Below, one piece after another: positions 22,995-59,176 of a stretch of DNA of 64,000 nucleotides; the stretch's first letter is position 1; the number at the start of each line of letters is the position of its first letter. The stretch is from Selaginella moellendorffii (taxonomy: Eukaryota > Plantae > Lycopodiophyta). The notes under the pieces were generated by a model. The model was not told the DNA's origin and did no database searches. It saw only the letters and a list, made by a program, of their open reading frames with translations. Made by a program: the position numbers and the translations under genes. Location of the stretch: the NCBI RefSeq assembly GCF_000143415.4, contig NW_003314380.1:355061-419060 (forward strand), written 5' to 3'.

Positions 22995-25394
22995 TCAGGA
23001 TGGAGCCAAGTTTGATAGAAGAATGTAGGCAGCGGAGTTGAGCTGGTCACAATCTACAGCATTCTCGGCTGCTTCTGCGGCGTGACTATAGTTGGACTGG
23101 ACATTTGATGCACTGAGGAGCGTGGTCCACGAGATGCTATTCGATTCAAACGGCATTTCTCGAGCGACAGTGCTAGCGTCGTCGAGCCTCCCGAGCCGGC
23201 CGAGAAGATCGACAATGCAGTGGTAGTGCTCCACGACAGGCTTCATGGAGTAGTCAGACGTGATAGTGGTGAAGTAGTAACGGGCTTCGTCAAAGAGACC
23301 AGCGTGGCTACAAGCCGAGAGAATGACAACGAAGGCAATCTCATCGGGCAGCTTACCATCGAGCGCCATGAGCTGAAACGCCTCCAGCGCGACTTTGCCG
23401 TCACCACTCCGGGCATAGGCCGCAACCAAGTTACTCCACACGACCACGTCCGGGTTTACGAGCTTGTTAAACAGCTTTCGAGCTTCACTCAGCTCTCCAC
23501 AGCTCGCAAAGACGGTGACAAGGTTCGCGACGAGTAGATTATCGGCCTCGCCGTGTCCGGCTTCTTCGAAACAGGAGAACATCTCTCTCGCTTGTGCTGG
23601 AGCTCCGGCGATCGAGCAGGCCTCCATAGCCGCAGTGGTGGCAACCACGTCGGGAAGAACACCATCTTGGTCCATGAGTTTGAAGGCTCTCACTCCATCC
23701 AAGGCTCGGCCGCTACTCTTGGCATAAGCAGTGATCAAGCACGTCCACGACACAACATCTCGATCTTCCATGGCTCGAAACAGTGGCTCCGCCTTGTCGA
23801 TCTTGCCGCTGGTGGCGCAAGCTTGGAGCATGGAATTAAACGACACGAGACTTCTCTCCGGCATTCTCTCAAACACCATCTCGGCATTCGCAAAATCGTT
23901 GTGCTGTGAGTAAGCCGAGAGGAGGATGTTCCATGACGCTATGTCTTTGTCTGGGTGTTTCTCAAATACAGCTCGAGCTTCGTGCAAATCCCCGGCTTTG
24001 GCATTTGCGTAAAGTAGCGCGTTCCAGGCCACAATGTTGTGCTCGGGCATTCTCTCAAACAAGTAAACCACCTGAGTTACATCTTTTTGCTGACTACACG
24101 TAACGATTATAGTTGACCATGAGACGAGGTCTTTGACCGGCATGGAGTCAAAGATCTTCCTAGACTCCGCCAACTTTCCTTGGCGAGCATATCCCTCAAT
24201 CATCACATTCCACGAGAATAAATCTCTTTCGGGCATAGAATGAAACAGATATTCCATCTCTTCAAACTCGCCAACTTGAGCGGACGCGTGCATCAACACG
24301 TTCGATGCAACCAGATTCCTTTGCGGGATATCGTCAAAGATTCCCTTGGCCGCCTTTAGATTCCGTGCCTGAGCATATCCCATGAGAATGCAAGTCCAAG
24401 ATACCACATTGGGCTCCGGAATCCTTCCAAAGATGCTTCTTGCCTGGTCAAAATCTGCAACTTTCACATACCCATACAGCATGGAATTCCAGGACACAGC
24501 ATCTCTCTCAGGCATCTTATCAAAGAGAACCTTGGCATCTTCTACAAGCCCATCCTGCGAATATGCTGAGATCATTGTGTTCCAAGTGACATGGTTCCGG
24601 ATAGGTGCTTGGTCAAAGAGCAATCTAGCCTTCGGTATCAAACCATTGTGAGAATATGCTCTTATCATGACATTCCAAGAGACAACATTTCTCTCTGGCA
24701 TTCTCTCAAAGAGATCCTCGGCATTGCGAACATCCCCATTTTGGGCATATGCGGTCAGCAGAGTAGTCCACGAAATAACATCGCGGATTTTCATTTTTTC
24801 CAGCATATCTTTTGCTTTATCGACTAAACCGAGCTTTACATAAGCTTGAAGCATTGCATTGCAGGATACCACACTCGGTTTTGGAATCTTTTCAAACGTT
24901 AGCTCAGCTTTCCGCACATTCCCGATCAGGGAATATGCCGTCACCATTGTAGTCAGCGACACATCGTTCTTGTCCACCATCTTTTCAAACAGTTCTTCAG
25001 CTTGCTTGAATTTACCCGTAGAGACATAGCAACTTAGCATTATATTACAAGAAACTACATTTGCTTGCGGCATCACCGCAAACAAAGCCTCGGCATCTGC
25101 TAGATTCCCTCTGTGGGCATATGCCGAAACCATAATATTCCACGTGAACGTGTTCCTGTCTCCCATGCCATTGAATATCCTGCGTGCGTCCTCGAGGCTT
25201 CCAAACCTCCCGTACATTTCAAGCAAGAGATTCCAGGAATATGTGCTGAGCTCCCAGTGATTCTCGGTAATCTTTTGGTGAAGTCTCGTACAAGCTGGAA
25301 AGTCCTTGGAACTCACACACTGTTTTAGTTTCGAGCAGACATCTCTGCTGGTTTCGTTCTCTAGCAATCTAGATGTAGCCCTGATTGATTTCAT
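22995..25394 (-). CDS. PLS-class pentatricopeptide repeat protein with partial E domain, intronless, dominated by 31-aa S motifs
   Basis: 799-aa ORF with many xVVSWNxMLxAYxQxG...LFxxMPER repeats, ILSACSHAGL, EHYHCIVDLLGRLG and AAYILLSNL; no DYW domain. Confidence 0.93.
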   Translation of the reverse strand: MKSIRATSRLLENETSRDVCSKLKQCVSSKDFPACTRLHQKITENHWELSTYSWNLLLEMYGRFGSLEDARRIFNGMGDRNTFTWNIMVSAYAHRGNLADAEALFAVMPQANVVSCNIMLSCYVSTGKFKQAEELFEKMVDKNDVSLTTMVTAYSLIGNVRKAELTFEKIPKPSVVSCNAMLQAYVKLGLVDKAKDMLEKMKIRDVISWTTLLTAYAQNGDVRNAEDLFERMPERNVVSWNVMIRAYSHNGLIPKARLLFDQAPIRNHVTWNTMISAYSQDGLVEDAKVLFDKMPERDAVSWNSMLYGYVKVADFDQARSIFGRIPEPNVVSWTCILMGYAQARNLKAAKGIFDDIPQRNLVASNVLMHASAQVGEFEEMEYLFHSMPERDLFSWNVMIEGYARQGKLAESRKIFDSMPVKDLVSWSTIIVTCSQQKDVTQVVYLFERMPEHNIVAWNALLYANAKAGDLHEARAVFEKHPDKDIASWNILLSAYSQHNDFANAEMVFERMPERSLVSFNSMLQACATSGKIDKAEPLFRAMEDRDVVSWTCLITAYAKSSGRALDGVRAFKLMDQDGVLPDVVATTAAMEACSIAGAPAQAREMFSCFEEAGHGEADNLLVANLVTVFASCGELSEARKLFNKLVNPDVVVWSNLVAAYARSGDGKVALEAFQLMALDGKLPDEIAFVVILSACSHAGLFDEARYYFTTITSDYSMKPVVEHYHCIVDLLGRLGRLDDASTVAREMPFESNSISWTTLLSASNVQSNYSHAAEAAENAVDCDQLNSAAYILLSNLAPS

Positions 25395-28965: not shown

Positions 28966-29145
28966 TTAAATCCTTTCTAGTATATTTTTTATTTTATAAT
29001 TTAATGAAATAAGATTAATATTGTGTTTAAACATGCTTATAATTATAAATTTTATTTGATCAATTAGATTGATAAGTAAAAATAACACTACTATTAAGCA
29101 AACCAAACATTGCTACATGCAATGCATAACAATTTATTATATATA

Positions 29146-29875
29146 TCATCTGTTTCTTTCCTGGAACTCCACCAAAGCTTTCACATAATCTTCTTCATTG
29201 AAGTCTGGCTGAAGCTTCTTAGTAAATACCAATTCTGTGTAACTCAAGTTGTTCACTAGATAGTTGCTCAATCTTTGCTCCCTGCTGGTGCAAATCAGTA
29301 GATCAGGGTCACTGACCTCCCCATCCAACTCGGTGAGCAGCATTTTCTTCCATAAGTAACACTGATTAATATCATTTGCCTTGACAACTCCTTGCTCAAC
29401 TTCAGAGGCTCGTCGGCAAGCCTGGAGAACATCTTCCCAGCCACCATAGGTGATAGCCAAAATAAACTTCAGATCCTTGCTATCTTGAGTCATCTCGTGT
29501 GCCTCAGAGATCTTTGCTTGTAGAGCTTGGACTTGTCTCCAATGCAGCGAACTTTGATCCCATCCCTGGAAAGTTTTTAGAATTTGTTATATACAAACAT
29601 ACTGCTTTTCGAGATTGTCATCCTTGAGAACAGTGTTTGGGTGATCAAGTTGTTCATGCAGTTTAAGAAAATTGCAGCAATGGATTCACACAGTTTGCAG
29701 AATGTATCCAAATCTCTTCCATTGCAGCTGGATCCAAAGCGTTTGCCTCAGCATGTTGCTGTGATACCTGATGGAAATGTCTGCTGGACCAAAGCCAATG
29801 GCCTCTCTGCTTATAAGGGTCTTTCGGTTCTAAGAGACATTGCTTGGATTTCCAACCAGTGGGGGATCGAAGTCA
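29146..29875 (-). pseudogene. cis-prenyltransferase pseudogene, duplicate of 32058-32907, with exon 1 internally inverted
   Basis: 29146-29650 is near-identical to CPT exon 2 and intron. About 29652-29873 is the reverse complement of 32690-32911. The splice donor and AFSTDNFKRP region are deleted and the C-terminal RYG is lost. Confidence 0.88.
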
Positions 29876-30629
29876 AAAGTTTTGAGAAGGAGCTCAAGCA
29901 GCCATCTTTTATATCGCATAGTTAAACATCAACTTGGACAACTTGTAAGTCGCCACGGTTCATAAATTATTTATCTCGTGCCCCTCATGGGAAGGAAAAC
30001 TAATGTTAAATATACTAAGATTCAGTCATACATATGTGTGACACATGCCAACCGAAGAAAATCGGAGACACAACATAGTTTTTAATATATAATCTAAAGA
30101 ACAATAATAATATTAAAGGTAAGAAATTTGACTTATGGCTGATTGCACGAGATTTTGTCTCCTTTAAGTAAGCATTAGCAAGGTTCACATGTAAGCAATG
30201 AGAGTTCAAAAGGTATTTCACAATTCCAATAATTGTTATAGAACATATCTTTAGAGTTTTTTGTCGCACAGAACAAAGCCAAATAAAGTTTTGCACAATT
30301 TTAACATATTTATAACTTAATGCAAAAATGTGGGCACTTCATTAACTAATAATGGCATGGAACTTAAGTTTAAACCCAAGCCAAATGCAAAACAAGAAAT
30401 AATATACCTAACAAAAGCTATCTACAGATTAAACTCCTGTAGCATGATCAAAAGATTCCTTAAGCTTAGTCCTAAGCCCTGTACTCTCCACATCCTACTG
30501 ACCTGCTCGCTAGATGGTCATAGCTCATCGCCATGGACTCCATAAACAGCTCGCTTTCCAGCATTGGCATCGCCAAAACTGCAATTTCCCATGGGGCTTA
30601 GCAGCCAATCCATCCACCTCATCAGCCTC

Positions 30630-30728
30630 CACGAACTTGACAACTTCCTGCTTGATCAAGCACAGCTGGATCACCTAGAAAGAATTGGAAGGCAGAGATT
30701 TTTCTCGAGGCTGATTGAGTTTTGCAAG
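30630..30728 (+). pseudogene. Possible relic of a plant terpene synthase beta-domain exon
   Basis: LDNF...LDHLERIGRQRFFSRLI resembles the TPS motif DLF...VDxLERLGIxRxFxxEI; short match only. Confidence 0.3.
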
Positions 30729-31054
30729 GTGAGGGGAGCAGGAGTAGCCGCAGCCGCAGGTGTTTTAGCTCCAGCTCGGGAGATCTGAGCGAGGAGGAAT
30801 CACCTAGCAAGAGGAAGAAATGGTGGGATGTCCCGTGCAGAGATAGTGCTGGTCAAAGGCTTGGATCATGCAGCATTTCGCTCAAATTGCCAAGAGAATA
30901 AATGCAATGATAAATGTTACAATAGGGCATTTGTAAATAGATCATTTTCAAAAGTTAAATTATAAGGGTAAAAATGAAAATAATGTAGTTTAATTAACTA
31001 TAATAAAATTCTTTTTATAAATCGTTACCGCTAGAAGCAGTGGAAGTTTCAAGC

Positions 31055-32041
31055 ATGAACAAGCAGATCAGTGGCCTCGTCTTCTCTCCGAGAGTTCAAT
31101 ACCGCCGCATCGCCACCAGCGCCTCCTCCACCAAGCCCAACAAGTTCGACTACGATCTCTATGTCAAATCCAAGTTCAAGGCCGTGTCCATCTCCATCCA
31201 GCACGCTCTCCCGCCGCCGTTCAAGCGGCCCGAGACGCTCCAGTTGCACGAGGCAATGCGCTACGCACTGAGCCAAGGGCGGCTGATGTGTGCCATCGTT
31301 TGCATCGCGGCGTGCGAGCTGGTGGGCGGCAGCCAGGACGACGCCATGCCAGGAGCCTGTGCGGTGGAGATGATCAAGACCAGCACTTGCGTCCAGGACG
31401 ATCTCCCGTCCATCGACAACGCAGAGCTCCGCGACGGCAAGCCGACTGTCCACTGCGCGTTTGGCATCCCTACGGCACTCTTCGCGGGTACCGCGCTGCT
31501 TGTGCTCGGGTTCGAGCACCTGGCAGCGCACTACCGGGGGGACACGGCGGCGAGGATGGTGGGGGAGGTGAGCCGGGCTGTCGGGTCAACGGGCCTGCTG
31601 GCCGGTCAAGCCGTCGACATGGGTATCCAGAACGCGGGCCGCGCAGTGGAGCTGGAGACTCTCGAGTTTGTCCACCTCCACAAGACGTCGGCGTTGCTCG
31701 AGGCGTCGCTGGTGATCGGGGCCATTGCCGGTGGCGCCAGCGATCAGGACATTGAGGCACTGAGAGCATATGGAAGGGTGACTGGGCTTCTCTACCAGAT
31801 CGTGGACGATATCGCGGATGCTACCAAGACGACCGAGGAGCTGGGGAAGGTCGCGGGCCAGGACGCGATGACGGGCAAGAGCACGTATTCCACCATCTTG
31901 GGCGTGGACAAGTCGAGGGAGATAGTTGGGCAGCTCTTGGTGGAGGCCAAGGAACGGCTGGGTGTGTTCGAGGAGACCAAGGCACTGCCTCTGATCCACC
32001 TCATGGATCACTTTGTTAATTGGGCTTATGATCGTAGATAA
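31055..32041 (+). CDS. Intronless GGPP-synthase-like trans-prenyltransferase with degenerate IPP-binding motifs (candidate IDS-derived terpene synthase)
   Basis: HEAMRY, CIAACELVGG, DDLPSID (FARM), GLLAGQAVD, HKTSALLEAS, YQIVDDIAD (SARM), ELGK and GKSTY. Short basic/Ser-rich N-terminus. TATA-like ttataaat near 31015. Confidence 0.9.
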   Translation: MNKQISGLVFSPRVQYRRIATSASSTKPNKFDYDLYVKSKFKAVSISIQHALPPPFKRPETLQLHEAMRYALSQGRLMCAIVCIAACELVGGSQDDAMPGACAVEMIKTSTCVQDDLPSIDNAELRDGKPTVHCAFGIPTALFAGTALLVLGFEHLAAHYRGDTAARMVGEVSRAVGSTGLLAGQAVDMGIQNAGRAVELETLEFVHLHKTSALLEASLVIGAIAGGASDQDIEALRAYGRVTGLLYQIVDDIADATKTTEELGKVAGQDAMTGKSTYSTILGVDKSREIVGQLLVEAKERLGVFEETKALPLIHLMDHFVNWAYDRR

Positions 32042-32057
32042 GCGTTAAAGCGCAGAC

Positions 32058-32907
32058 TTAATTATCATGTCGTCCATATCGCCTGTTTCTTTCCTGGAAC
32101 TCCACCACAGCTTTCACGTAATCTTCTTCATTGAAGTCTGGCCAAAGCTTCTCAGTAAATACCAATTCCGTGTAACTCAAGTTGTTCATTAGATAGTTGC
32201 TCAATCTTTGCTCCCCGCTGGTGCGAATCAGTAGATCGGGGTCACCGACCTCCTCATCCCACTCGGTGAGCAGCATTTTCTTCCTTAAGTAGCACTGATC
32301 AATATCATTTGCCTTGACAACTCCTTGCTCAACTTCAGAGGCTATTCGTTGGCAAGCCTGGAGAACATCTTCCCAGCCGCCATAGGCAATAGCCAATATA
32401 AACTTCAGATCCTTGCTATCTCGAGTCATCTCGTGTGCCTCAGAGATCTTTGCTTGTAGAGACCTTGGAAGCTTGGACATGTCTCCAATGCAGCGAACTT
32501 TGAGCCCATCCCTGGAAAGTTTTTAGAATTTGTTCATACTGCTTTTCGAGATTGTCATCCTGGCATACTTACTTGAGAACTGTGTTTGGGTGATCAAGCG
32601 TGAACATGTTGTCCAGGTGCTCAAGCACGAACTCAACCTCTGCCTTTGGTCTCTTGAAGTTATCGGTGGAGAATGCAAATGCCGTTAATACTTCGATCCC
32701 CCACTGGTTGGAAATCCGAGCAATGTCTCGTAGAACCGAAAGACCCTTATAAGCGGAGAGGCCATTGGCTTTGGTCCAGCGGACATTTCCATCAGGTATC
32801 ACAGCAACATGCCGAGGCAAACGCTTTGGATCCAGCTGCAATGGAAGAGATCTAGATACATTCTGCAAACTATGTGAATCCATTGCTGCAATTTGCTTAA
32901 ACTGCAT
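32058..32907 (-). CDS. cis-prenyltransferase (UPPS/CPT family), 2 exons (32907 or 32883 to 32573; 32511-32058)
   Basis: PRHVAVIPDGN, AFAFSTDNFKRP, AIAYGG, DPDLLIRTSGEQRLSNY, LWPDF and RNRRYG. A 61-bp GT-AG intron joins LK-DGLKVRCIGD in frame. TATAAAAG near 32934-32927. Confidence 0.9.
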
Positions 32908-33442: not shown

Positions 33443-35918
33443 CTACATTGGATTGGAGGTTAGCTTGATGGGAAGGCCCTTGAGTGGTACTGCCAGTGGA
33501 GCCATTTGCACGATCTCGTCTGGGTCACACGAGCTCCACTTGAACCGGGTGACAATGTGGTACAAAAACACGCATTCTTGGACCTTGGCAAGCTCGTAAC
33601 CAGGGCACATGCGCGTCCCACCACCGAATGAGATGTACGAGTAAGGACCGGGCCCGTGCCAAGGAACCTGTCTGGCTTGAAGCTCTCAGCCTCGGGGAAG
33701 AACTTTTCCTTCTTGTTGCTCTGGTTCAAACAGTTGTTTTGACATGGTTTCAGCAGGGATCAGGAGTAAGAAGAAGAAGAAGCTATTGAGATATACACTC
33801 TCTATAACATGATTCTAAGTGGTAATAATGCCACTTAATTCATCCAAGTATAAGTTAAAGGTGTGTCTTTTGATCATGTATATATAAATATGATATTATA
33901 TATAATTATCCTTCAGGTCATCTTTGTCCATCGTAACTTCCACATATCTCTTTCATGGTATAGGAGCCTTGAGGGCTCAAGATCCTGGGGCGATGGCGCT
34001 GGCCGAGGAAGAGGCCAGCAAGGATGACGATGAGCCACCGAACGTGGCTGAGAGGTGCCAAGATTTGGCACTGCACTGCACTGAGCACCAAGATAACGGC
34101 ACTAGCGAGCTGAGCAAGGCGCTAAGGTGTGATTGAGCAGAGACTGGCGCTGGCAGAGGCGCTGAGAGAGGGCTGGCTTGAGGTACCAAGCGGTACTGGA
34201 GCGCTGAGTGAGGCGCTGGTGTGAGAGAGCGGCCTAAGGCACTGGCACCGAGCAGAGACTGCGCTAGGGTGCTGAGCAAGGCACGATGGCACTGTGCACT
34301 GGCAGAGGCACTGAGAGAGGGCTGGGCAAGCAGAGACTGCGATCAGAGGCGCTGAGCAAGGCGCTAGGGCGTGCGAGGCAGAGGCGCCGACAGAGGTGCC
34401 GGGCACTGGCCAGAGGTGAGTGTTGGGTGTAAAGGCACGACGCAGAATGCAAAAGAATGGAGTGTTGGACTGCTGCAAGCAGGCAGAGGTGATGCTAGCT
34501 GCTGGGCTGTGAGATGGCTCCATAGCAGAGGGAGAGAGCCGTTAGGGCACTGGCCGAGGAGGCTTGATTGAGGCTGAGACGATGGGAGCTTCAGCCAAGG
34601 ACAGTGAGAGATCAGAGTTACAATGGACAAAGATAACTCAAAAGATAATTATATATAATATTATAGTTATATATACATAATCAAAAGATACACCTTTAGG
34701 TTATACCTAGATCAATAAAATGGCATTATAGATCATGTTATAAAGAGTGTATATCTCAACAAAGCTAAAGATCTTGAAGAGAGAAAAAAAAAAACGAATC
34801 TGCCATCCCTGTGGAACTGTGTGGCCACCCATTTCGAAGTCCATGATGGCCTGGCGAAAAACTCCAATGGTGGGTGGCATGAAGCGCATGCCTTCTTGGA
34901 CCACTCTCCATGTATACTTCATGCATTGGACATTAGCAATCAAAAGTGGCTCTCCAGCCTTCTTGGAAGCAGCAATATCCAAGTGCTCCACAAAGAGGGA
35001 GAGAGAGAGTGTGTTAGTCGACAAGGAGCTTTAAAGAGTCAACCTTTCTGGAGCTGTACCCTACTATTGGCGAAGCTGAAGGAAGGGAGCCGGAGGAGCC
35101 CGGCTTAGCAGGATGGATTCTCCGTGATGTATTGAGCTGTCATGGGTTCCAATAACCAGCATCAAGATGTTTTGCTTGATCGCCTCGTCGGTCATGCGTC
35201 GCCCATCTTGACCAGCAGCACCGACAGGAGATCTTGCTGCTCAGACGGGAGGATGCCTTCCCGCTCTGCAAATCCAGTCGCCGCTGCTCCATCATCCGGT
35301 CCAGCTTCGTCATGATCTCCTGGCGGCCAGCCATGCCCTTGGAGAACGCGGTTGCGGGGAAATCGAGCGGGAGCTCGATGAGAGCGTGCAAGACGACGCG
35401 GAAGGGATCCAGGAGCTCCTGCTGCTCCTTCTCGTCGGTCAGGCTCAGGAAGAGATCATAGATGACGGCATAGAGCGCCTCCTTGACGGAGTGGTACGCT
35501 TTGATCTCGCCACCCGCGATCCAGCTCTCCTCGACGTGCTTCTGGATCATGGCGATTCGTCCCACGTACCGCTGGAGCGCCTCGGGACCCAGGAGCGCAA
35601 TGAGGATGTGACGGAACGGCCTGAAGAAGAGAGATCGCTCCCCGACGAGCTTCTTGACGGAGCTGGGCCAGGAGCCATGCACGATCTTGCTCTGATTGGT
35701 GAAAATGAGCTTCAATCCATCAGTGGAAGTCACCATTACCGTGGGCAAGCCAAACAAATGTGTTTTGAAAACCGGGCCATACTTCCCACGGCTTGGAATG
35801 GAGCAAATGTAGCATCTCTCCGACAAAGGGTGGCGTATTTCTTCTAGGTCAACCTCCATACCAAGATGGCCAAGAACACACCAGACAATGACACCAAAAT
35901 TAGCACTGGATCTAACAT
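33443..35918 (-). pseudogene. CYP85-clan cytochrome P450 (CYP716-like) pseudogene, 3 exons
   Basis: TM anchor MLDPVLILVSLSGVFLAILVW followed by a stop. KYGPVFKTHLFGLPT, I-helix LVIGTHDSS, K-helix EGMR, FKPDRF and heme motif FGGGTRMCPG lie in different frames. Several frameshifts, in-frame stops and deletions. Confidence 0.88.
33784..34761. mobile_element. Non-autonomous TIR DNA transposon (Ginger/GingerRoot-like) inserted in P450 intron 2
   Basis: About 150-bp imperfect TIRs (tattgagatatacactc...ttgtccatcgtaact and agttacaatggacaa...gagtgtatatctcaaca). 4-bp TSD AAGC at 33780-33783 and 34762-34765. GC-rich repetitive interior. Confidence 0.75.
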
Positions 35919-56572: not shown

Positions 56573-57278
56573 TAAAAAATGAAAGAAAACCTAAAACTTG
56601 AAGGATGGTTTCGGATCATTCAAATTAACAAGGAAAAAAAAAGGAATCTAAGTTGGGGCCAAAAGTAATTGCATTCATTTATAAGTAGGGATTAATAGTG
56701 CTAGGATTCCATTGTGCTGTGCTCATCCATAGCTTACATTTTCTACACAATGACCATGAAAAAATCACACCCAAGTTCAACCACTGTGATTTGGTATATG
56801 TCAATGCAGACTGAGATCTTTGGAACAAGATCCTTAAGAGTACATATGACCTTAGAAGATCATTTGGATCACTTTCAACCAGAATTTGGATATGTACAGG
56901 TCTTTGGTGAACTTTTCAACAGGGCAAAATAAGCCCAAGCCTCACAGCCACACTGGATCACCTAATGCCGGAGGATGGGGACGCTGCCAAGGAAGATCCC
57001 CTTTACATTGAGAGCCCACAGCTTTGCAACACCCCATGAACACCAATAGGAGCACGTGCCCACCTCAAACAACAAGTGAGACTTCAAAAAGGACATCACT
57101 CATCCAACATTTGATGCCGGAGGATAAGATGCTTAGAAGACTGATTGCTTCTGAGTTCCTTTATGTCTGTTGTTTTGTGCCTATGTGAAGCTATTGACAA
57201 AAAATGTGATGATCCATATGAACCTCTTCACAGGATCATGGGGAGAGAGAGAGAGAGAGAGAGAGAGTGTGTCTTTGC

Positions 57279-59176
57279 CATGACATCCAGCGAAGTAGCA
57301 AGAGGAGTGATCGCGGTGCCTCCTGCAGGCATCTCCACGCTAGGCCATCGCCAAATCGCGACTCTTCTGCGCCAATGTGGTGATTCCAAGTCCCTTCCGC
57401 GAGGGAAGCTCTTGCACCGCCGCCTGGCCGCCACCCTCGACCTACGCCACCACCCCTTGTTCAGCAATCTCCTCATCCTCATGTATGGGACCAGCCTCCC
57501 GGACGCATGGTCCGTCTTCCACGATCTCGTCCACAAGAACGCCTTCTCCTGTAACATCATGATCTCGACGCTCTGCGCAAACGGCGAGAGCGCGCAAGCG
57601 ATTCATCTCTTCCTCGCCCTCGCCAGCGATTCAGTCGTCCGCCCCACCCACGTCTCGTTCGTCGCCGCGCTCGCCGCCTGCGCCAATTGCCGCGATCTCC
57701 AGTCGGGCATCCGGATCCACGCCCAGATCGTCGCCGCGCCACCCGCGATCGCGAGCAATCCAGTCGTGTGCTGCGCCCTCTTAACCATGTATCGGAAATG
57801 CGGCAGCCTGGCAGACGCGCGGAAGGTCTTCGATGACATGCCTCGCAAGACGATAGTCGCCTGGAGTGCGATGCTGGCTGCTTACACCAGAAATCCCGAT
57901 CAGGGCGGGCTCCCCGCTGCGATCGAGCTCTATCGCCAGCTCCGGGATGCCGGCATTGGAACACTGCGATTGCCGCAAATGCCCATAATGGGCAGTTTAG
58001 AGCGGCGATTGCGCTGCAGTGGAAGTTGGATCTGGAAGGGATCGGGCCTGATATGGTGACGCTGACTGAGATCCTGGCAGCGTGTTCTTGGAAGCAGGAT
58101 AAAGCACAGGGTATAAAGATCCACGAGCGTACTTGCTCGTGTGGCTGGGAGCGTAATGTTGTCGCTGGAACCTCTATCGTCAAAGTGTGGCAGAATCAAG
58201 GAAGCAAAGCGTGTTTTTTGTCAAATGCACGTACGCGATGTTGTGACTTGGAACGCTATGATCTCCGCGCTTGCCCAGACCGGGCATTGCAGAGAGGCGA
58301 TCAATCTCTACAAGAAGATGGGCGTTCAAAGGAATTCGAGCAGTTTCATGAGCGCCCTCGGTGCTTGTGCATTTCTAGGATCTCTGCAAGACGGCAAAAA
58401 AATCCATGCCGAGGTCATTGCGAGATTTGCCAGCTTGTCTCATCGATTTCTCGAGACTGGAGTGGGTAATGCGATGATCAACATGTATGAAAAATGGCAG
58501 CAAGCAGTCGAAGCAAAGAAAGTTTTTGATTCATTAAAATTTAGAAATGTGATCACTTGGAACGCTACTATTGCAGCATTTGCCCAAAACGGGTATTTCA
58601 CAGAAGCCCTTGACTTGTACCATTGTATGGTTAAGAAATACTCGTCCGTGCGTCCAGACAATGTGACATACGTGAACGCTCTCCACGCTTGCGCGGGACT
58701 GGGATGGATCCCAGGGCAGGGATCTTCACTCGCGAATCGCCGCGAGCGAGTGGAGCAGCGACGCAGTGGTGATGAACAGCGTGATGAGCATGTTTGTGCG
58801 GTGCGGCAGCCCAGGCGAGGCCAAGCGCGTCTTCCTGGGTCTGAAGAACCGCTCCGCAGTGTCGTGGACGATCGCGATCGCTGCCACTGCACAGCAAGCG
58901 AGCAGCGGCGAGGCCGTGGAGCTGTTCTTGGGGATGGTCCACCCGGATTCCTACGCATTCGCAGGGATTCTCTTCGCATGTAGCCATGGAGGGCTTCTCG
59001 ACACCGGATGGAGCTGCTTCACATCGATGCGGCAGGATTTTGGCGTGGATCCGGGAGCCGAGCACTTAGATCTTCTGGGTCGTGCGGGGCGATCGAATCA
59101 AGCCAAAGAGCTCCTCCTCGCCATGCCCTTCTCTCTGGATGATATTTCTTGGACGGCTTCCGTGTCTATTAGGTGA
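57279..59176 (+). pseudogene. PLS-class PPR gene with multiple frameshifts
   Basis: PPR motifs (MYRKCGSLADARKVFD, DVVTWNAMISA, FACSHGGL, DLLGRAG) are split across ORFs 57145, 58026, 58141 and 58766 in different frames. Confidence 0.8.

What the first reader, a model, noticed from the sequence alone, without database searches (positions are those of the whole stretch)
31055..32041. GGPPS-like protein keeps the Mg/allylic-site motifs but has systematically lost IPP-site residues: candidate plant IDS-derived terpene synthase
Seen, against the plant GGPPS consensus recalled from memory: GGKRVRP>QGRLMCA, EMIHT>EMIKT, HDD>QDD, LRRG>LRDG, AGDALL>AGTALL, GKTAGKD>GKVAGQD and C-terminal AYR>AYD. FARM (DDLPSID), SARM (DDIAD), GQxxD and KT are intact and the ORF is uninterrupted. 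Established: these basic and His residues bind the IPP diphosphate, and their loss with retention of the DDxxD motifs characterises IDS-derived terpene synthases in insects and some fungi. Non-catalytic GPPS small subunits instead typically lack the SARM. Inference: a neofunctionalised enzyme that ionises an allylic diphosphate without elongating it. To my knowledge this route is not established in land plants.
Basis: partly seen in the sequence, partly recalled or inferred. Interest (0 to 1): 0.85.

Follow-up and report, generated by a model that had tools for sequence, protein, structure and literature searches.

The report
Spikemoss GGPPS copy lacking IPP site
The spikemoss Selaginella moellendorffii expresses and conserves a diverged copy of the isoprenoid chain-building enzyme GGPPS that keeps its prenyl-donor machinery but has lost the clamps for its usual acceptor (IPP), so it probably does a different, still untested, prenyl chemistry.

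Summary
Window 31055-32041 (+) is an intact 328-aa GGPPS-fold gene of Selaginella moellendorffii (scaffold GL377684.1).

- **Active site:** All 14 Mg/allylic-diphosphate ligands are kept. All five IPP-diphosphate clamps are changed (K76R, R79C, H108K, R127D, R323W), and three of these lose the positive charge. It fails all six published IPP-binding motifs.
- **Real gene:** It is transcribed from its own strand in four studies. It is under purifying selection against its only close relative, an 80%-identical paralog elsewhere in the genome (dN/dS 0.25-0.43).
- **Origin:** It sits on a very long stem inside land-plant GGPPS.
- **Not a small subunit:** Its SARM is complete, it has no second CxxxC near the SARM, and it scores closer to the large subunit than to SSU-II.

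"Terpene synthase" is not shown. The paralog lies among aromatic-amino-acid decarboxylase, methyltransferase and P450 genes, so prenyl transfer to a non-IPP acceptor is equally likely. Some cited residues are not IPP ligands, and the "AYR>AYD" alignment is wrong.

The scan had already flagged the paralog on other DNA (s1-385054). Function is untested.

The parts
31055..32041 (+). Complete intronless CDS of the GGPPS-like protein 'A' (328 aa plus stop)
   Evidence: ORF. Pfam PF00348 at 3e-42. Exact protein on GL377684.1. AF2 pLDDT 89.8, and best PDB match is mint GPPS large subunit 3krf_D at TM 0.93. RNA contigs cover it with 0 differences.
31055..31144 (+). N-terminal presequence (residues 1-30), S/T/R-rich and disordered; possible organelle transit peptide
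   Evidence: pLDDT below 50 for residues 1-22. It evolves fast against the paralog (dN 0.20, dS 0.05) while the core has omega 0.34. Targeting was not tested.
31274..31294 (+). First IPP-binding motif rewritten: QGRLMCA in place of GGKRVRP (K76R, R77L, R79C)
   Evidence: Fails regex IBM-1.
31289..31315 (+). Two overlapping CxxxC motifs in region I (CAIVC, CIAAC). The first was created by R79C.
   Evidence: Read directly from the sequence. The paralog has CPIAC/CIAAC.
31367..31417 (+). IBM-2 plus FARM: EMIKTSTCVQ-DDLPSID. H108K, M110S, L112C and H114Q are changed; D115, D116 and D121 are kept.
31421..31438 (+). IBM-3: AELRDG. R126 (allylic side) is kept. R127 (IPP side) is Asp here and His in the paralog.
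   Evidence: R127 is R in 262 of 266 homologues.
31484..31492 (+). AGT in place of AGD (D146T), shared with the paralog
31604..31618 (+). GQAVD motif, intact
31682..31687 (+). KT motif (K210, T211), intact
31793..31819 (+). SARM block YQIVDDIAD, complete including the last Asp
   Evidence: Matches the published SARM regex..
31844..31864 (+). GKVAGQD: K265 is kept; K269Q
32009..32041 (+). C-terminus HFVNWAYDRR plus stop. The invariant Arg is replaced by W323. The last four residues are a read-through past the paralog's stop position.
32058..32883 (-). Neighbouring cis-prenyltransferase gene, 254 aa. Exon 1 is 32883-32573, the intron is 32572-32512, and exon 2 is 32511-32058. It is tail-to-tail with gene A, with the stop codons 16 bases apart.
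   Evidence: Pfam Prenyltransf. Gene model. The intron is spliced out in reads and contigs of 4 runs. The closest structures are plant plastidial short-chain cis-prenyltransferases.
29143..29874 (.). Rearranged, stop-containing pseudogene copy of the same cis-prenyltransferase, upstream of gene A
   Evidence: tblastn: the first 65 codons lie inverted at 29680-29874, and the rest lies on the minus strand with in-frame stops. No RNA reads.

Best explanation
**What it is.** Gene A is a lineage-specific descendant of the plastid-type land-plant GGPP synthase. It has been converted into a non-elongating prenyl-diphosphate enzyme.

**Shown here:**
- It keeps the complete IDS alpha-fold.
- It keeps every ligand that binds the three Mg2+ ions and the allylic diphosphate: both Asp-rich motifs, R126, K210/T211, Q248, K265 and K275.
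- The positively charged clamp that holds the diphosphate of IPP is dismantled: R79C, R127D, R323W, plus K76R, H108K and R77L.
- It is transcribed, and selection maintains it.

**Inferred:**
- It still binds and ionises an allylic diphosphate to a carbocation.
- It cannot hold IPP, so the cation must end another way.
- Route (a): the cation is quenched within the prenyl chain or by water. This is terpene-synthase-like, as in insect, termite and fungal IDS-derived synthases.
- Route (b): the cation is captured by a different, non-phosphorylated nucleophile bound in the former IPP pocket. This is acceptor-swapped prenyl transfer, for example to an indole or aryl amine, as the paralog's neighbours suggest.
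- I rate routes (a) and (b) about equal for this copy.
- The adjacent, co-expressed short-chain-type cis-prenyltransferase may supply an unusual (cis) prenyl diphosphate as donor. This last point is speculative.
For: - **Site partition.** Five of 5 IPP clamps are changed against 0 of 14 Mg/allylic ligands, on a background of 49 changed among 152 conserved columns (Fisher p = 8.6e-5).
- **Published rule set.** A and the paralog fail IBM-1 to IBM-6 but meet the SARM regex of PMC10108439. Of 118 plant GGPPS, 99 fail at most one of the five most diagnostic IBMs.
- **Purifying selection.** dN/dS of A against the paralog is 0.25 (ML) to 0.43 (NG86). The bootstrap 95% interval is 0.29-0.62, and none of 300 replicates reached 1. 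A third tandem copy without constraint has a stop and 7 indels at only 7% divergence.
- **Expression.** Stranded RNA-seq reads come from the coding strand, and RNA contigs from three further studies match with 0 mismatches.
- **Intact fold.** pLDDT is 89.8, and TM is 0.93 to the mint large subunit in its IPP/DMASPP complex.
- **Burst then constraint.** The stem is 3.47 substitutions per site against a median tip of 0.42.
- **Precedent for the conversion.** It is known in insects, termites and fungi (PMC10108439, PMC13143122, PMC7484799).
Against: - No enzyme assay exists.
- Two of the five clamp changes keep a basic residue, and A carries two Arg at its new C-terminus, so weak IPP binding is not excluded.
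- Divergence is general: a third of the conserved columns are changed.
- Tomato GGPPS-like TPT1 and TPT2 showed no activity in vitro. Orphan GGPPS-like proteins may therefore be inactive or regulatory.
- S. moellendorffii already has many canonical and microbial-type terpene synthases (my own knowledge; the source paper appears only as a reference in the paper read), so there is no obvious need for another.
- Gene A's own neighbours (a cis-prenyltransferase and its pseudogene) differ from the paralog's. The paralog's context therefore transfers to A only weakly.
Confidence: 0.55

Rival explanations
1. Non-catalytic partner. A forms heterodimers with the canonical GGPPS, or with another prenyl enzyme such as the neighbouring cis-prenyltransferase, and tunes its product or location. 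It has no turnover of its own, like the SSU-I and SSU-II small subunits.
For: - Two CxxxC motifs lie in region I, and such motifs mediate contact between large and small subunits.
- IPP-site loss is also a trait of small subunits.
- Tomato GGPPS-like TPT1 and TPT2 are inactive in vitro.
Against: - All 14 Mg/allylic ligands survived a branch that replaced a third of the conserved columns (p = 0.003). Small subunits lose the last SARM Asp or both motifs.
- The SSU-defining second CxxxC near the SARM is absent.
- HMMER score to SSU-II OsGRP is 150 bits against 277 to OsGGPPS1. The ratio is similar to that of a genuine GGPPS (196 against 442).
Confidence: 0.2
2. Still a condensing IDS. It either elongates with IPP at low affinity (K76R, H108K and the new C-terminal Arg-Arg would compensate), or it couples two allylic units irregularly, as plant chrysanthemyl diphosphate synthase does.
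For: - The residues that contact the isoprenyl tail of IPP are mostly kept: T211, L214, L215, Q248, D251, and F247Y, which the regex allows.
- Two clamp positions remain basic.
Against: - R127 is invariant in 262 of 266 homologues and is an Asp here. R79 and R323 are also lost.
- The paralog lacks the C-terminal Arg-Arg yet shares the other changes.
- A scores 224 bits on the NCBIfam short-chain IDS subfamily model (cut-off 275). Canonical plant GGPPS score 346-352.
Confidence: 0.15
3. A duplicate on its way to decay, transcribed but without function.
For: - The duplication is gene-sized only, with no flanking homology.
- A decayed third copy and a decayed cis-prenyltransferase copy lie nearby.
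- Selection is somewhat relaxed compared with housekeeping enzymes.
Against: - The ORF is intact at 12% nucleotide divergence, while the tandem copy B' is broken at 7%.
- dN/dS is significantly below 1.
- The gene is expressed in four studies.
- The catalytic residues are invariant.
Confidence: 0.04

Closest known systems
Termite GGPPS-derived terpene synthases (PMC13143122) and other insect IDS-derived terpene synthases (PMC10108439, PMC6140472)
   Same: - They arose by duplication of a trans-IDS.
- The Asp-rich Mg sites are kept and the IPP-binding motifs are disrupted. The disruption includes loss of basic residues and gain of acidic or aromatic ones.
- They show long branches after duplication.
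   Different: - They are an independent, animal origin from type-III GGPPS or from FPPS, with no specific sequence kinship to this protein.
- Their terpene products are demonstrated; here nothing is assayed.
- In termites only the FARM and one motif stay conserved. Here both FARM and SARM are perfect.
Fungal IDS-like terpene synthases (PMC7484799)
   Same: They have the IDS fold and an IDS-like sequence and are used for terpene synthase chemistry.
   Different: They come from a different kingdom and lineage, and I did not compare them residue by residue here.
Plant GGPPS/GPPS small subunits SSU-I and SSU-II (e.g. OsGRP, PDB 5xn6 chain C)
   Same: They are GGPPS-family paralogs with an altered first IPP motif and CxxxC motifs.
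   Different: - SSU-I lacks both Asp motifs.
- SSU-II lacks the last SARM Asp and has a second CxxxC near the SARM.
- Gene A keeps a full SARM, has both its CxxxC motifs in region I, and scores much closer to the large subunits.
Orphan angiosperm GGPPS-like proteins: tomato TPT1/TPT2 (PMC7422722), Catharanthus roseus IDS6 (P0165), Acer negundo P0153
   Same: - They are plant GGPPS-derived.
- CrIDS6 and the Acer protein have lost 3-4 of the 5 clamps while keeping all six Asp.
- Their function is unknown, and TPT1/2 are inactive as IDS.
   Different: - They form a separate clade inside angiosperms with only 37-39% identity to A.
- CrIDS6 also lacks the GK loop.
- I did not check whether TPT1/2 belong to that clade.
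Paralog B of the same genome (XP_002968087.2 / XP_002970322.2; earlier scan note s1-385054)
   Same: - It is 80% identical to A.
- It has the same R79C, H108K, H114Q, D146T, K269Q and R323W changes.
- It is expressed and under purifying selection between haplotypes (omega 0.10-0.16).
   Different: - Its acceptor-pocket residues differ: R77, T78, P80, H127, F111 and P267.
- It has no YDRR tail.
- It lies among aromatic-amino-acid decarboxylase, CMAS-type methyltransferase, P450 and UGT genes, not beside cis-prenyltransferases.
Chrysanthemyl diphosphate synthase of Asteraceae (from memory, not checked here)
   Same: It is a plant trans-IDS (FPPS) duplicate that no longer elongates with IPP. The general route from IDS to new chemistry is therefore not wholly without precedent in land plants.
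   Different: It derives from FPPS, not GGPPS. It still binds a second diphosphate substrate (DMAPP) in the IPP site, so its clamps are not dismantled.

Membership tests
Elongating short-chain trans-IDS / plant plastidial GGPPS | Polyprenyl synthetase alpha-fold | tested here: met
   Pfam PF00348 at 145 bits. The AF2 model has TM 0.93 to 3krf_D.
Elongating short-chain trans-IDS / plant plastidial GGPPS | FARM and SARM Asp-rich motifs plus allylic-diphosphate ligands | tested here: met
   All 14 positions are identical to the consensus.
Elongating short-chain trans-IDS / plant plastidial GGPPS | IPP-binding motifs (GKR; H-x17-RR; C-terminal Arg; IBM-1 to IBM-6) | tested here: not met
   The motifs read GRL, K-x17-RD and W323, and all six IBM regexes fail.
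Elongating short-chain trans-IDS / plant plastidial GGPPS | Curated family score (NCBIfam FPPsyn subfamily cut-off 275; CrtE equivalog cut-off 460) | tested here: not met
   A scores 224 and 257 bits. Canonical plant GGPPS score 346-352 and 422-455. These models were built for prokaryotes.
Elongating short-chain trans-IDS / plant plastidial GGPPS | IPP-dependent chain elongation activity | not testable with these tools
   This needs an enzyme assay.
GGPPS/GPPS small subunits (SSU-I, SSU-II) | SARM incomplete (SSU-II lacks the last Asp) or both Asp motifs lost (SSU-I) | tested here: not met
   DDIAD is complete and the FARM is complete. The criterion is taken from PMC7728057.
GGPPS/GPPS small subunits (SSU-I, SSU-II) | Second CxxxC motif in region IV near the SARM | tested here: not met
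   There is no Cys between residues 113 and 328 other than C134. Both CxxxC motifs lie at residues 79-87.
GGPPS/GPPS small subunits (SSU-I, SSU-II) | Closer in sequence to SSU than to the large subunit | tested here: not met
   Scores are 150 bits to OsGRP and 72 bits to mint SSU, against 277 bits to OsGGPPS1. No SSU sequence was available by reference, so this was not tested on a tree.
GGPPS/GPPS small subunits (SSU-I, SSU-II) | Heterodimerises with GGPPS and alters its product | not testable with these tools
   This needs a protein interaction or activity assay.
IDS-derived terpene synthases (a functional class, polyphyletic) | Descent from a trans-IDS by duplication | tested here: met
   It nests in the embryophyte GGPPS clade (99/99) on a 3.47 substitutions-per-site stem.
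IDS-derived terpene synthases (a functional class, polyphyletic) | Metal-binding Asp motifs kept while IPP-binding motifs are disrupted | tested here: met
IDS-derived terpene synthases (a functional class, polyphyletic) | Forms a terpene from an allylic diphosphate without IPP | not testable with these tools
   This needs an enzyme assay.
Canonical plant terpene synthases (TPS-a to TPS-h) or microbial-type MTPSL | Terpene_synth / Terpene_synth_C or microbial TPS domains | tested here: not met
   PF00348 is the only Pfam hit.

The most novel reading that the evidence does not exclude
A and its paralog would found a plant family of soluble, IDS-fold prenyltransferases whose former IPP pocket binds a non-phosphorylated nucleophile.

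- **Paralog B** would prenylate a tryptamine-type indole at C3, giving the 3a-prenyl pyrrolidinoindoline alkaloids of S. moellendorffii (selaginellic acid series).
- **Gene A** is the window gene. Its pocket differs (D127, L77, M78, A80) and it overlaps a short-chain-type cis-prenyltransferase tail-to-tail. It would use another acceptor and/or a cis-prenyl donor made next door.

This would be a third structural class of aromatic prenyltransferase in plants, beside the membrane UbiA type, and a new evolutionary exit from GGPPS.
Probability: 0.25. Interest if true: 0.9.

Novelty: new variant of a known kind. Interest (0 to 1): 0.62.

Why it matters
- Conversion of a chain-elongating IDS into an enzyme that only ionises its prenyl donor is known from insects, termites and fungi. 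My literature searches found no case reported for a land-plant GGPPS.
- This gene is a clean candidate that can be tested directly. It is intact, expressed, selectively maintained, and its donor and acceptor sites have separated sharply.
- If it is catalytic, it adds either a new route to terpenes or a new soluble prenyltransferase class in plants.
- It may also explain orphan GGPPS-like genes in angiosperms (CrIDS6, Acer, perhaps tomato TPT1/2).
- If it is inactive, it would be a new kind of GGPPS-family regulatory subunit, one that keeps both Asp motifs.

Tried and rejected
1. **SSU-I/SSU-II on the tree.** No SSU sequence could be obtained by reference. The hit lists stop at GGPPS-like proteins, and CrIDS6 turned out to be GGPPS-derived, not SSU-II. 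The SSU test therefore rests on HMMER scores and motifs, not on phylogeny.
2. **Canonical S. moellendorffii GGPPS.** It was not among the listed hits, so the duplication could not be dated within lycophytes.
3. **The 39-row tree.** The careful tree with the other clamp-less proteins did not finish. The quick tree joins A/B weakly (85, open) with three long Logan-derived proteins, and I treat that as possible long-branch attraction.
4. **Flanking homology between loci A and B.** None was found. Homology runs only from 22 nt upstream of the ATG to B's stop.
ORF 33460-33729 (-) has no Pfam hit, no RNA and no gene call, so I do not count it as part of a cluster.
6. **Papers not held or not useful.** The OsGRP PNAS paper and the Psm2 paper are not held. 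Coman et al. 2014 does not mention Selaginella.
7. **A-B differences in the IBM regions.** By eye about 10 of 38 positions differ there against about 17% overall. This is not convincing enrichment and I did not pursue it.
Full report
**Where this is.** The window is Selaginella moellendorffii assembly GCA_000143415.2, scaffold GL377684.1 (468 kb). The protein of window 31055-32041 (+) is found there exactly. The ORF is uninterrupted, 328 aa, intronless, and its only Pfam hit is polyprenyl_synt (145 bits).

**Checking the observation.** The final YDRR exists because this gene reads TAT where its paralog has the TGA stop, and homology ends there. FARM, SARM, GQxxD and KT are intact.

**Is it more than chance?**
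- The protein is diverged overall. It differs at 49 of the 152 columns that are at least 90% conserved in plant GGPPS.
- I took the diphosphate clamps of IPP from the published contact analysis (K71, R74, Q/H110, R127, R365 in HsFPPS numbering; PMC10108439). All five are changed here: K76R, R79C, H108K, R127D, R323W.
- All 14 Mg/allylic-diphosphate ligands are unchanged.
- The contrast gives Fisher p = 8.6e-5. Each half alone has p of about 0.003 against the background.
- Two changes are conservative (K to R, H to K) and three remove the charge. In 266 homologues these three positions are R in 249, 262 and 250 proteins.
- H114Q, D146T and K269Q are real, but they are not established IPP ligands.
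- Using the paper's regular expressions, A and its paralog fail IBM-1 to IBM-6 and pass the SARM expression. Among the 118 plant GGPPS, 99 fail none or one of the five most diagnostic IBMs, and the worst fails four.

**Is it a live gene?**
- In 5.8 billion clustered proteins the only close relative is an 80%-identical S. moellendorffii protein (XP_002968087.2 / XP_002970322.2). It lies on two haplotype scaffolds, and I call it paralog B. Everything else is at or below 50% identity.
- An exhaustive HMMER scan of 1.84 billion representatives also found nothing between A's own cluster and 49% identity.
- dN/dS between A and B is 0.25 (ML), 0.22 (YN00) and 0.39-0.43 (NG86). The bootstrap 95% interval is 0.29-0.62, and no replicate of 300 exceeded 0.75. 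The core alone gives 0.34. The two B haplotypes give 0.10-0.16.
- A third, tandem copy beside B is only 7% diverged from B yet carries an in-frame stop and seven indels. This shows what an unconstrained copy looks like in this genome.
- Stranded RNA-seq reads (run X21) cover A at 6-27x with the orientation expected for a plus-strand mRNA. Contigs from three other studies cover it with no mismatch. Those contigs are RNA, because they lack the 61-nt intron of the neighbouring gene.
- B is expressed too (X1 record 5).
- The AF2 model is confident (pLDDT 89.8, with only residues 1-22 disordered). It superposes on the mint GPPS large subunit in its closed IPP/DMASPP complex (TM 0.93, rmsd 1.6).

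**Origin.**
- On a careful ML tree, A+B (100/100) sit inside the embryophyte GGPPS clade (99/99) and outside seed plants. Their stem is 3.47 substitutions per site against a median tip of 0.42.
- The sister (a liverwort long branch) is not trustworthy.
- The A-B duplication is gene-sized. Homology runs from 22 nt before the ATG to B's stop, with no flanking similarity.

**Not a small subunit.**
- According to PMC7728057, SSU-I lacks both Asp motifs. SSU-II lacks the last SARM Asp and carries a second CxxxC near the SARM.
- A has a complete DDIAD. It has no Cys near the SARM, and both its CxxxC motifs are in region I.
- A scores 277 bits to OsGGPPS1, 150 to the SSU-II OsGRP and 72 to mint SSU-I. 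A genuine GGPPS (AtGGPPS11) scores 442 against 196 for the first two.
- I could not put SSU sequences on the tree.
- A also falls below the NCBIfam short-chain IDS subfamily cut-off (224 against 275), which canonical plant GGPPS pass at 346-352.

**Context of A.**
- Sixteen bases past A's stop, on the opposite strand, ends a two-exon cis-prenyltransferase gene (254 aa, 32058-32883). It is spliced and expressed.
- Its closest structures are plant plastidial short-chain enzymes: lavandulyl-, neryl-, nerylneryl- and Z,Z-farnesyl-diphosphate synthases.
- It is itself atypical. A four-residue deletion removes the conserved His after 'YxG', and it reads YLMNN where relatives have FLLWQ.
- Minus-strand RNA continues over A's coding region, so the two transcripts overlap.
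- Upstream of A lies a rearranged, stop-containing, silent copy of the same cis-prenyltransferase.

**Context of B.**
- B is flanked by an aromatic-L-amino-acid decarboxylase (best PDB hits are tyrosine, DOPA and tryptophan decarboxylases), two or three CMAS-type methyltransferases, a P450, a UGT and lipases.
- S. moellendorffii makes pyrrolidinoindoline alkaloids such as selaginellic acid (PMC5385659; PMC8620148).
- From memory of Wang et al. 2009 (J Nat Prod 72:1151), not checked here, these alkaloids carry an oxidised prenyl group at C-3a and N-methyl groups. Decarboxylase, N-methyltransferases, a prenyl-transfer step and a P450 are the enzyme types such a pathway needs.
- I wrote this idea down. 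A later look-up showed that the scan had already flagged B with the same reading (s1-385054). That is not independent evidence.

**How it most likely works.**
- Shown: the donor side is intact and constrained, and the IPP clamp is gone.
- Relative to the consensus, the pocket loses about four positive charges in A: R77L, R79C, R127D, K269Q and R323W, partly offset by D146T and H108K. It gains Trp, Tyr and Cys.
- Inferred: the enzyme binds an allylic diphosphate through three Mg2+ ions and ionises it. The cation is then either resolved within the prenyl chain or by water (terpene-synthase-like), or attacked by a neutral or cationic nucleophile that occupies the old IPP site.
- The residues that cradle IPP's isoprenyl tail are mostly kept (T211, L214, L215, Q248, D251). 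This fits a nucleophile sitting in the same place without a diphosphate.
- I give the non-elongating catalytic reading 0.55, split about evenly between the two outcomes. The rivals are a regulatory partner (0.20), residual or irregular condensation (0.15) and decay (0.04).

**Comparison and novelty.**
- The closest working analogues are the insect and termite IDS-derived terpene synthases (PMC10108439, PMC13143122) and the fungal IDS-like synthases (PMC7484799). They are convergent, not kin.
- In plants I found no reported GGPPS-derived synthase or soluble IDS-fold aromatic prenyltransferase.
- Orphan GGPPS-like proteins do exist. Tomato TPT1/TPT2 are inactive as IDS. C. roseus IDS6 and an Acer protein have lost 3-4 clamps while keeping all Asp, and they form a separate clade inside angiosperms.
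- The spikemoss pair is therefore a new, independently arisen variant of a known evolutionary theme, and its function is untested.

Noticed in passing
window 32058-32883 (-): The neighbouring cis-prenyltransferase is itself atypical. A 4-residue deletion removes the conserved His after the 'YxG' segment. It reads 'TDNF' for 'SENW' and 'YLMNN' for 'FLLWQ'. It is nevertheless spliced and expressed, and it is closest to plant short-chain cis-prenyltransferases (lavandulyl, neryl, nerylneryl and Z,Z-farnesyl diphosphate synthases).
   Followed up: partly
window 31167-32151: Convergent overlap of transcripts. Minus-strand RNA signal (first mate on +, 2-9x) runs across the coding region of gene A, and cis-prenyltransferase contigs reach back to 31960. 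The two mRNAs are therefore antisense to each other at their 3' ends.
   Followed up: no
window 29143-29874: A rearranged pseudogene of the cis-prenyltransferase. Its first 65 codons are inverted at 29680-29874, and the rest lies on the minus strand with in-frame stops and an Arg-to-Cys change in the RTSGE motif. No RNA reads cover it. NCBI calls a 160-aa protein here.
   Followed up: partly
window 30278-31054: RNA contigs and reads extend at least 777 nt upstream of gene A's ATG without splicing (X1 contig 30278-31417). This is either a long 5' UTR or a separate upstream transcript. Read depth drops to 0 at 30773-30969 in the raw-read run.
   Followed up: no
window 33925-34712: An expressed stretch (RNA of the + strand by read orientation) with many 'goes back' joints and loose ends around 34146-34379. 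This suggests a short tandem repeat whose copy number differs between the assembly and the transcripts. It overlaps ORF 34122-34523 (-).
   Followed up: no
window 33460-33729 (-): A P450-C-terminus-like ORF (FxPDRF... then a degenerate haem-Cys motif). It has no Pfam hit, no RNA and no gene call, so it is probably a remnant.
   Followed up: partly
L001 19403-20387 (GL377575.1): A third GGPPS-like copy (B') sits in a tandem duplication of the decarboxylase/methyltransferase block on one haplotype only. It is 93% identical to B but has a stop and 7 indels. NCBI isoforms XP_024528823.1 and XP_024528824.1 appear to splice B onto B' sequence.
   Followed up: partly
L001 / L002 (GL377575.1, GL377579.1): A candidate alkaloid-type gene neighbourhood around paralog B: an aromatic-amino-acid decarboxylase, 2-3 CMAS-type methyltransferases (weak similarity also to geranyl-diphosphate C-methyltransferase), a P450, a UGT and lipases.
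   Followed up: partly
proteins P0165, P0153, P0136, P0167, P0138, P0134: Other GGPPS-like proteins have lost 2-4 of the five IPP clamps yet keep all six Asp. They are C. roseus IDS6, an Acer negundo protein, three transcript-derived proteins of unknown organisms (one from SRR12034789), and a JGI metagenome cluster. This looks like a recurrent and unexplored class.
   Followed up: partly
window 22995-25394 (-), 57145-58983 (+): Intronless pentatricopeptide-repeat genes. The first is 799 aa. The second is split over two ORFs, which may reflect a frameshift or an intron.
   Followed up: no
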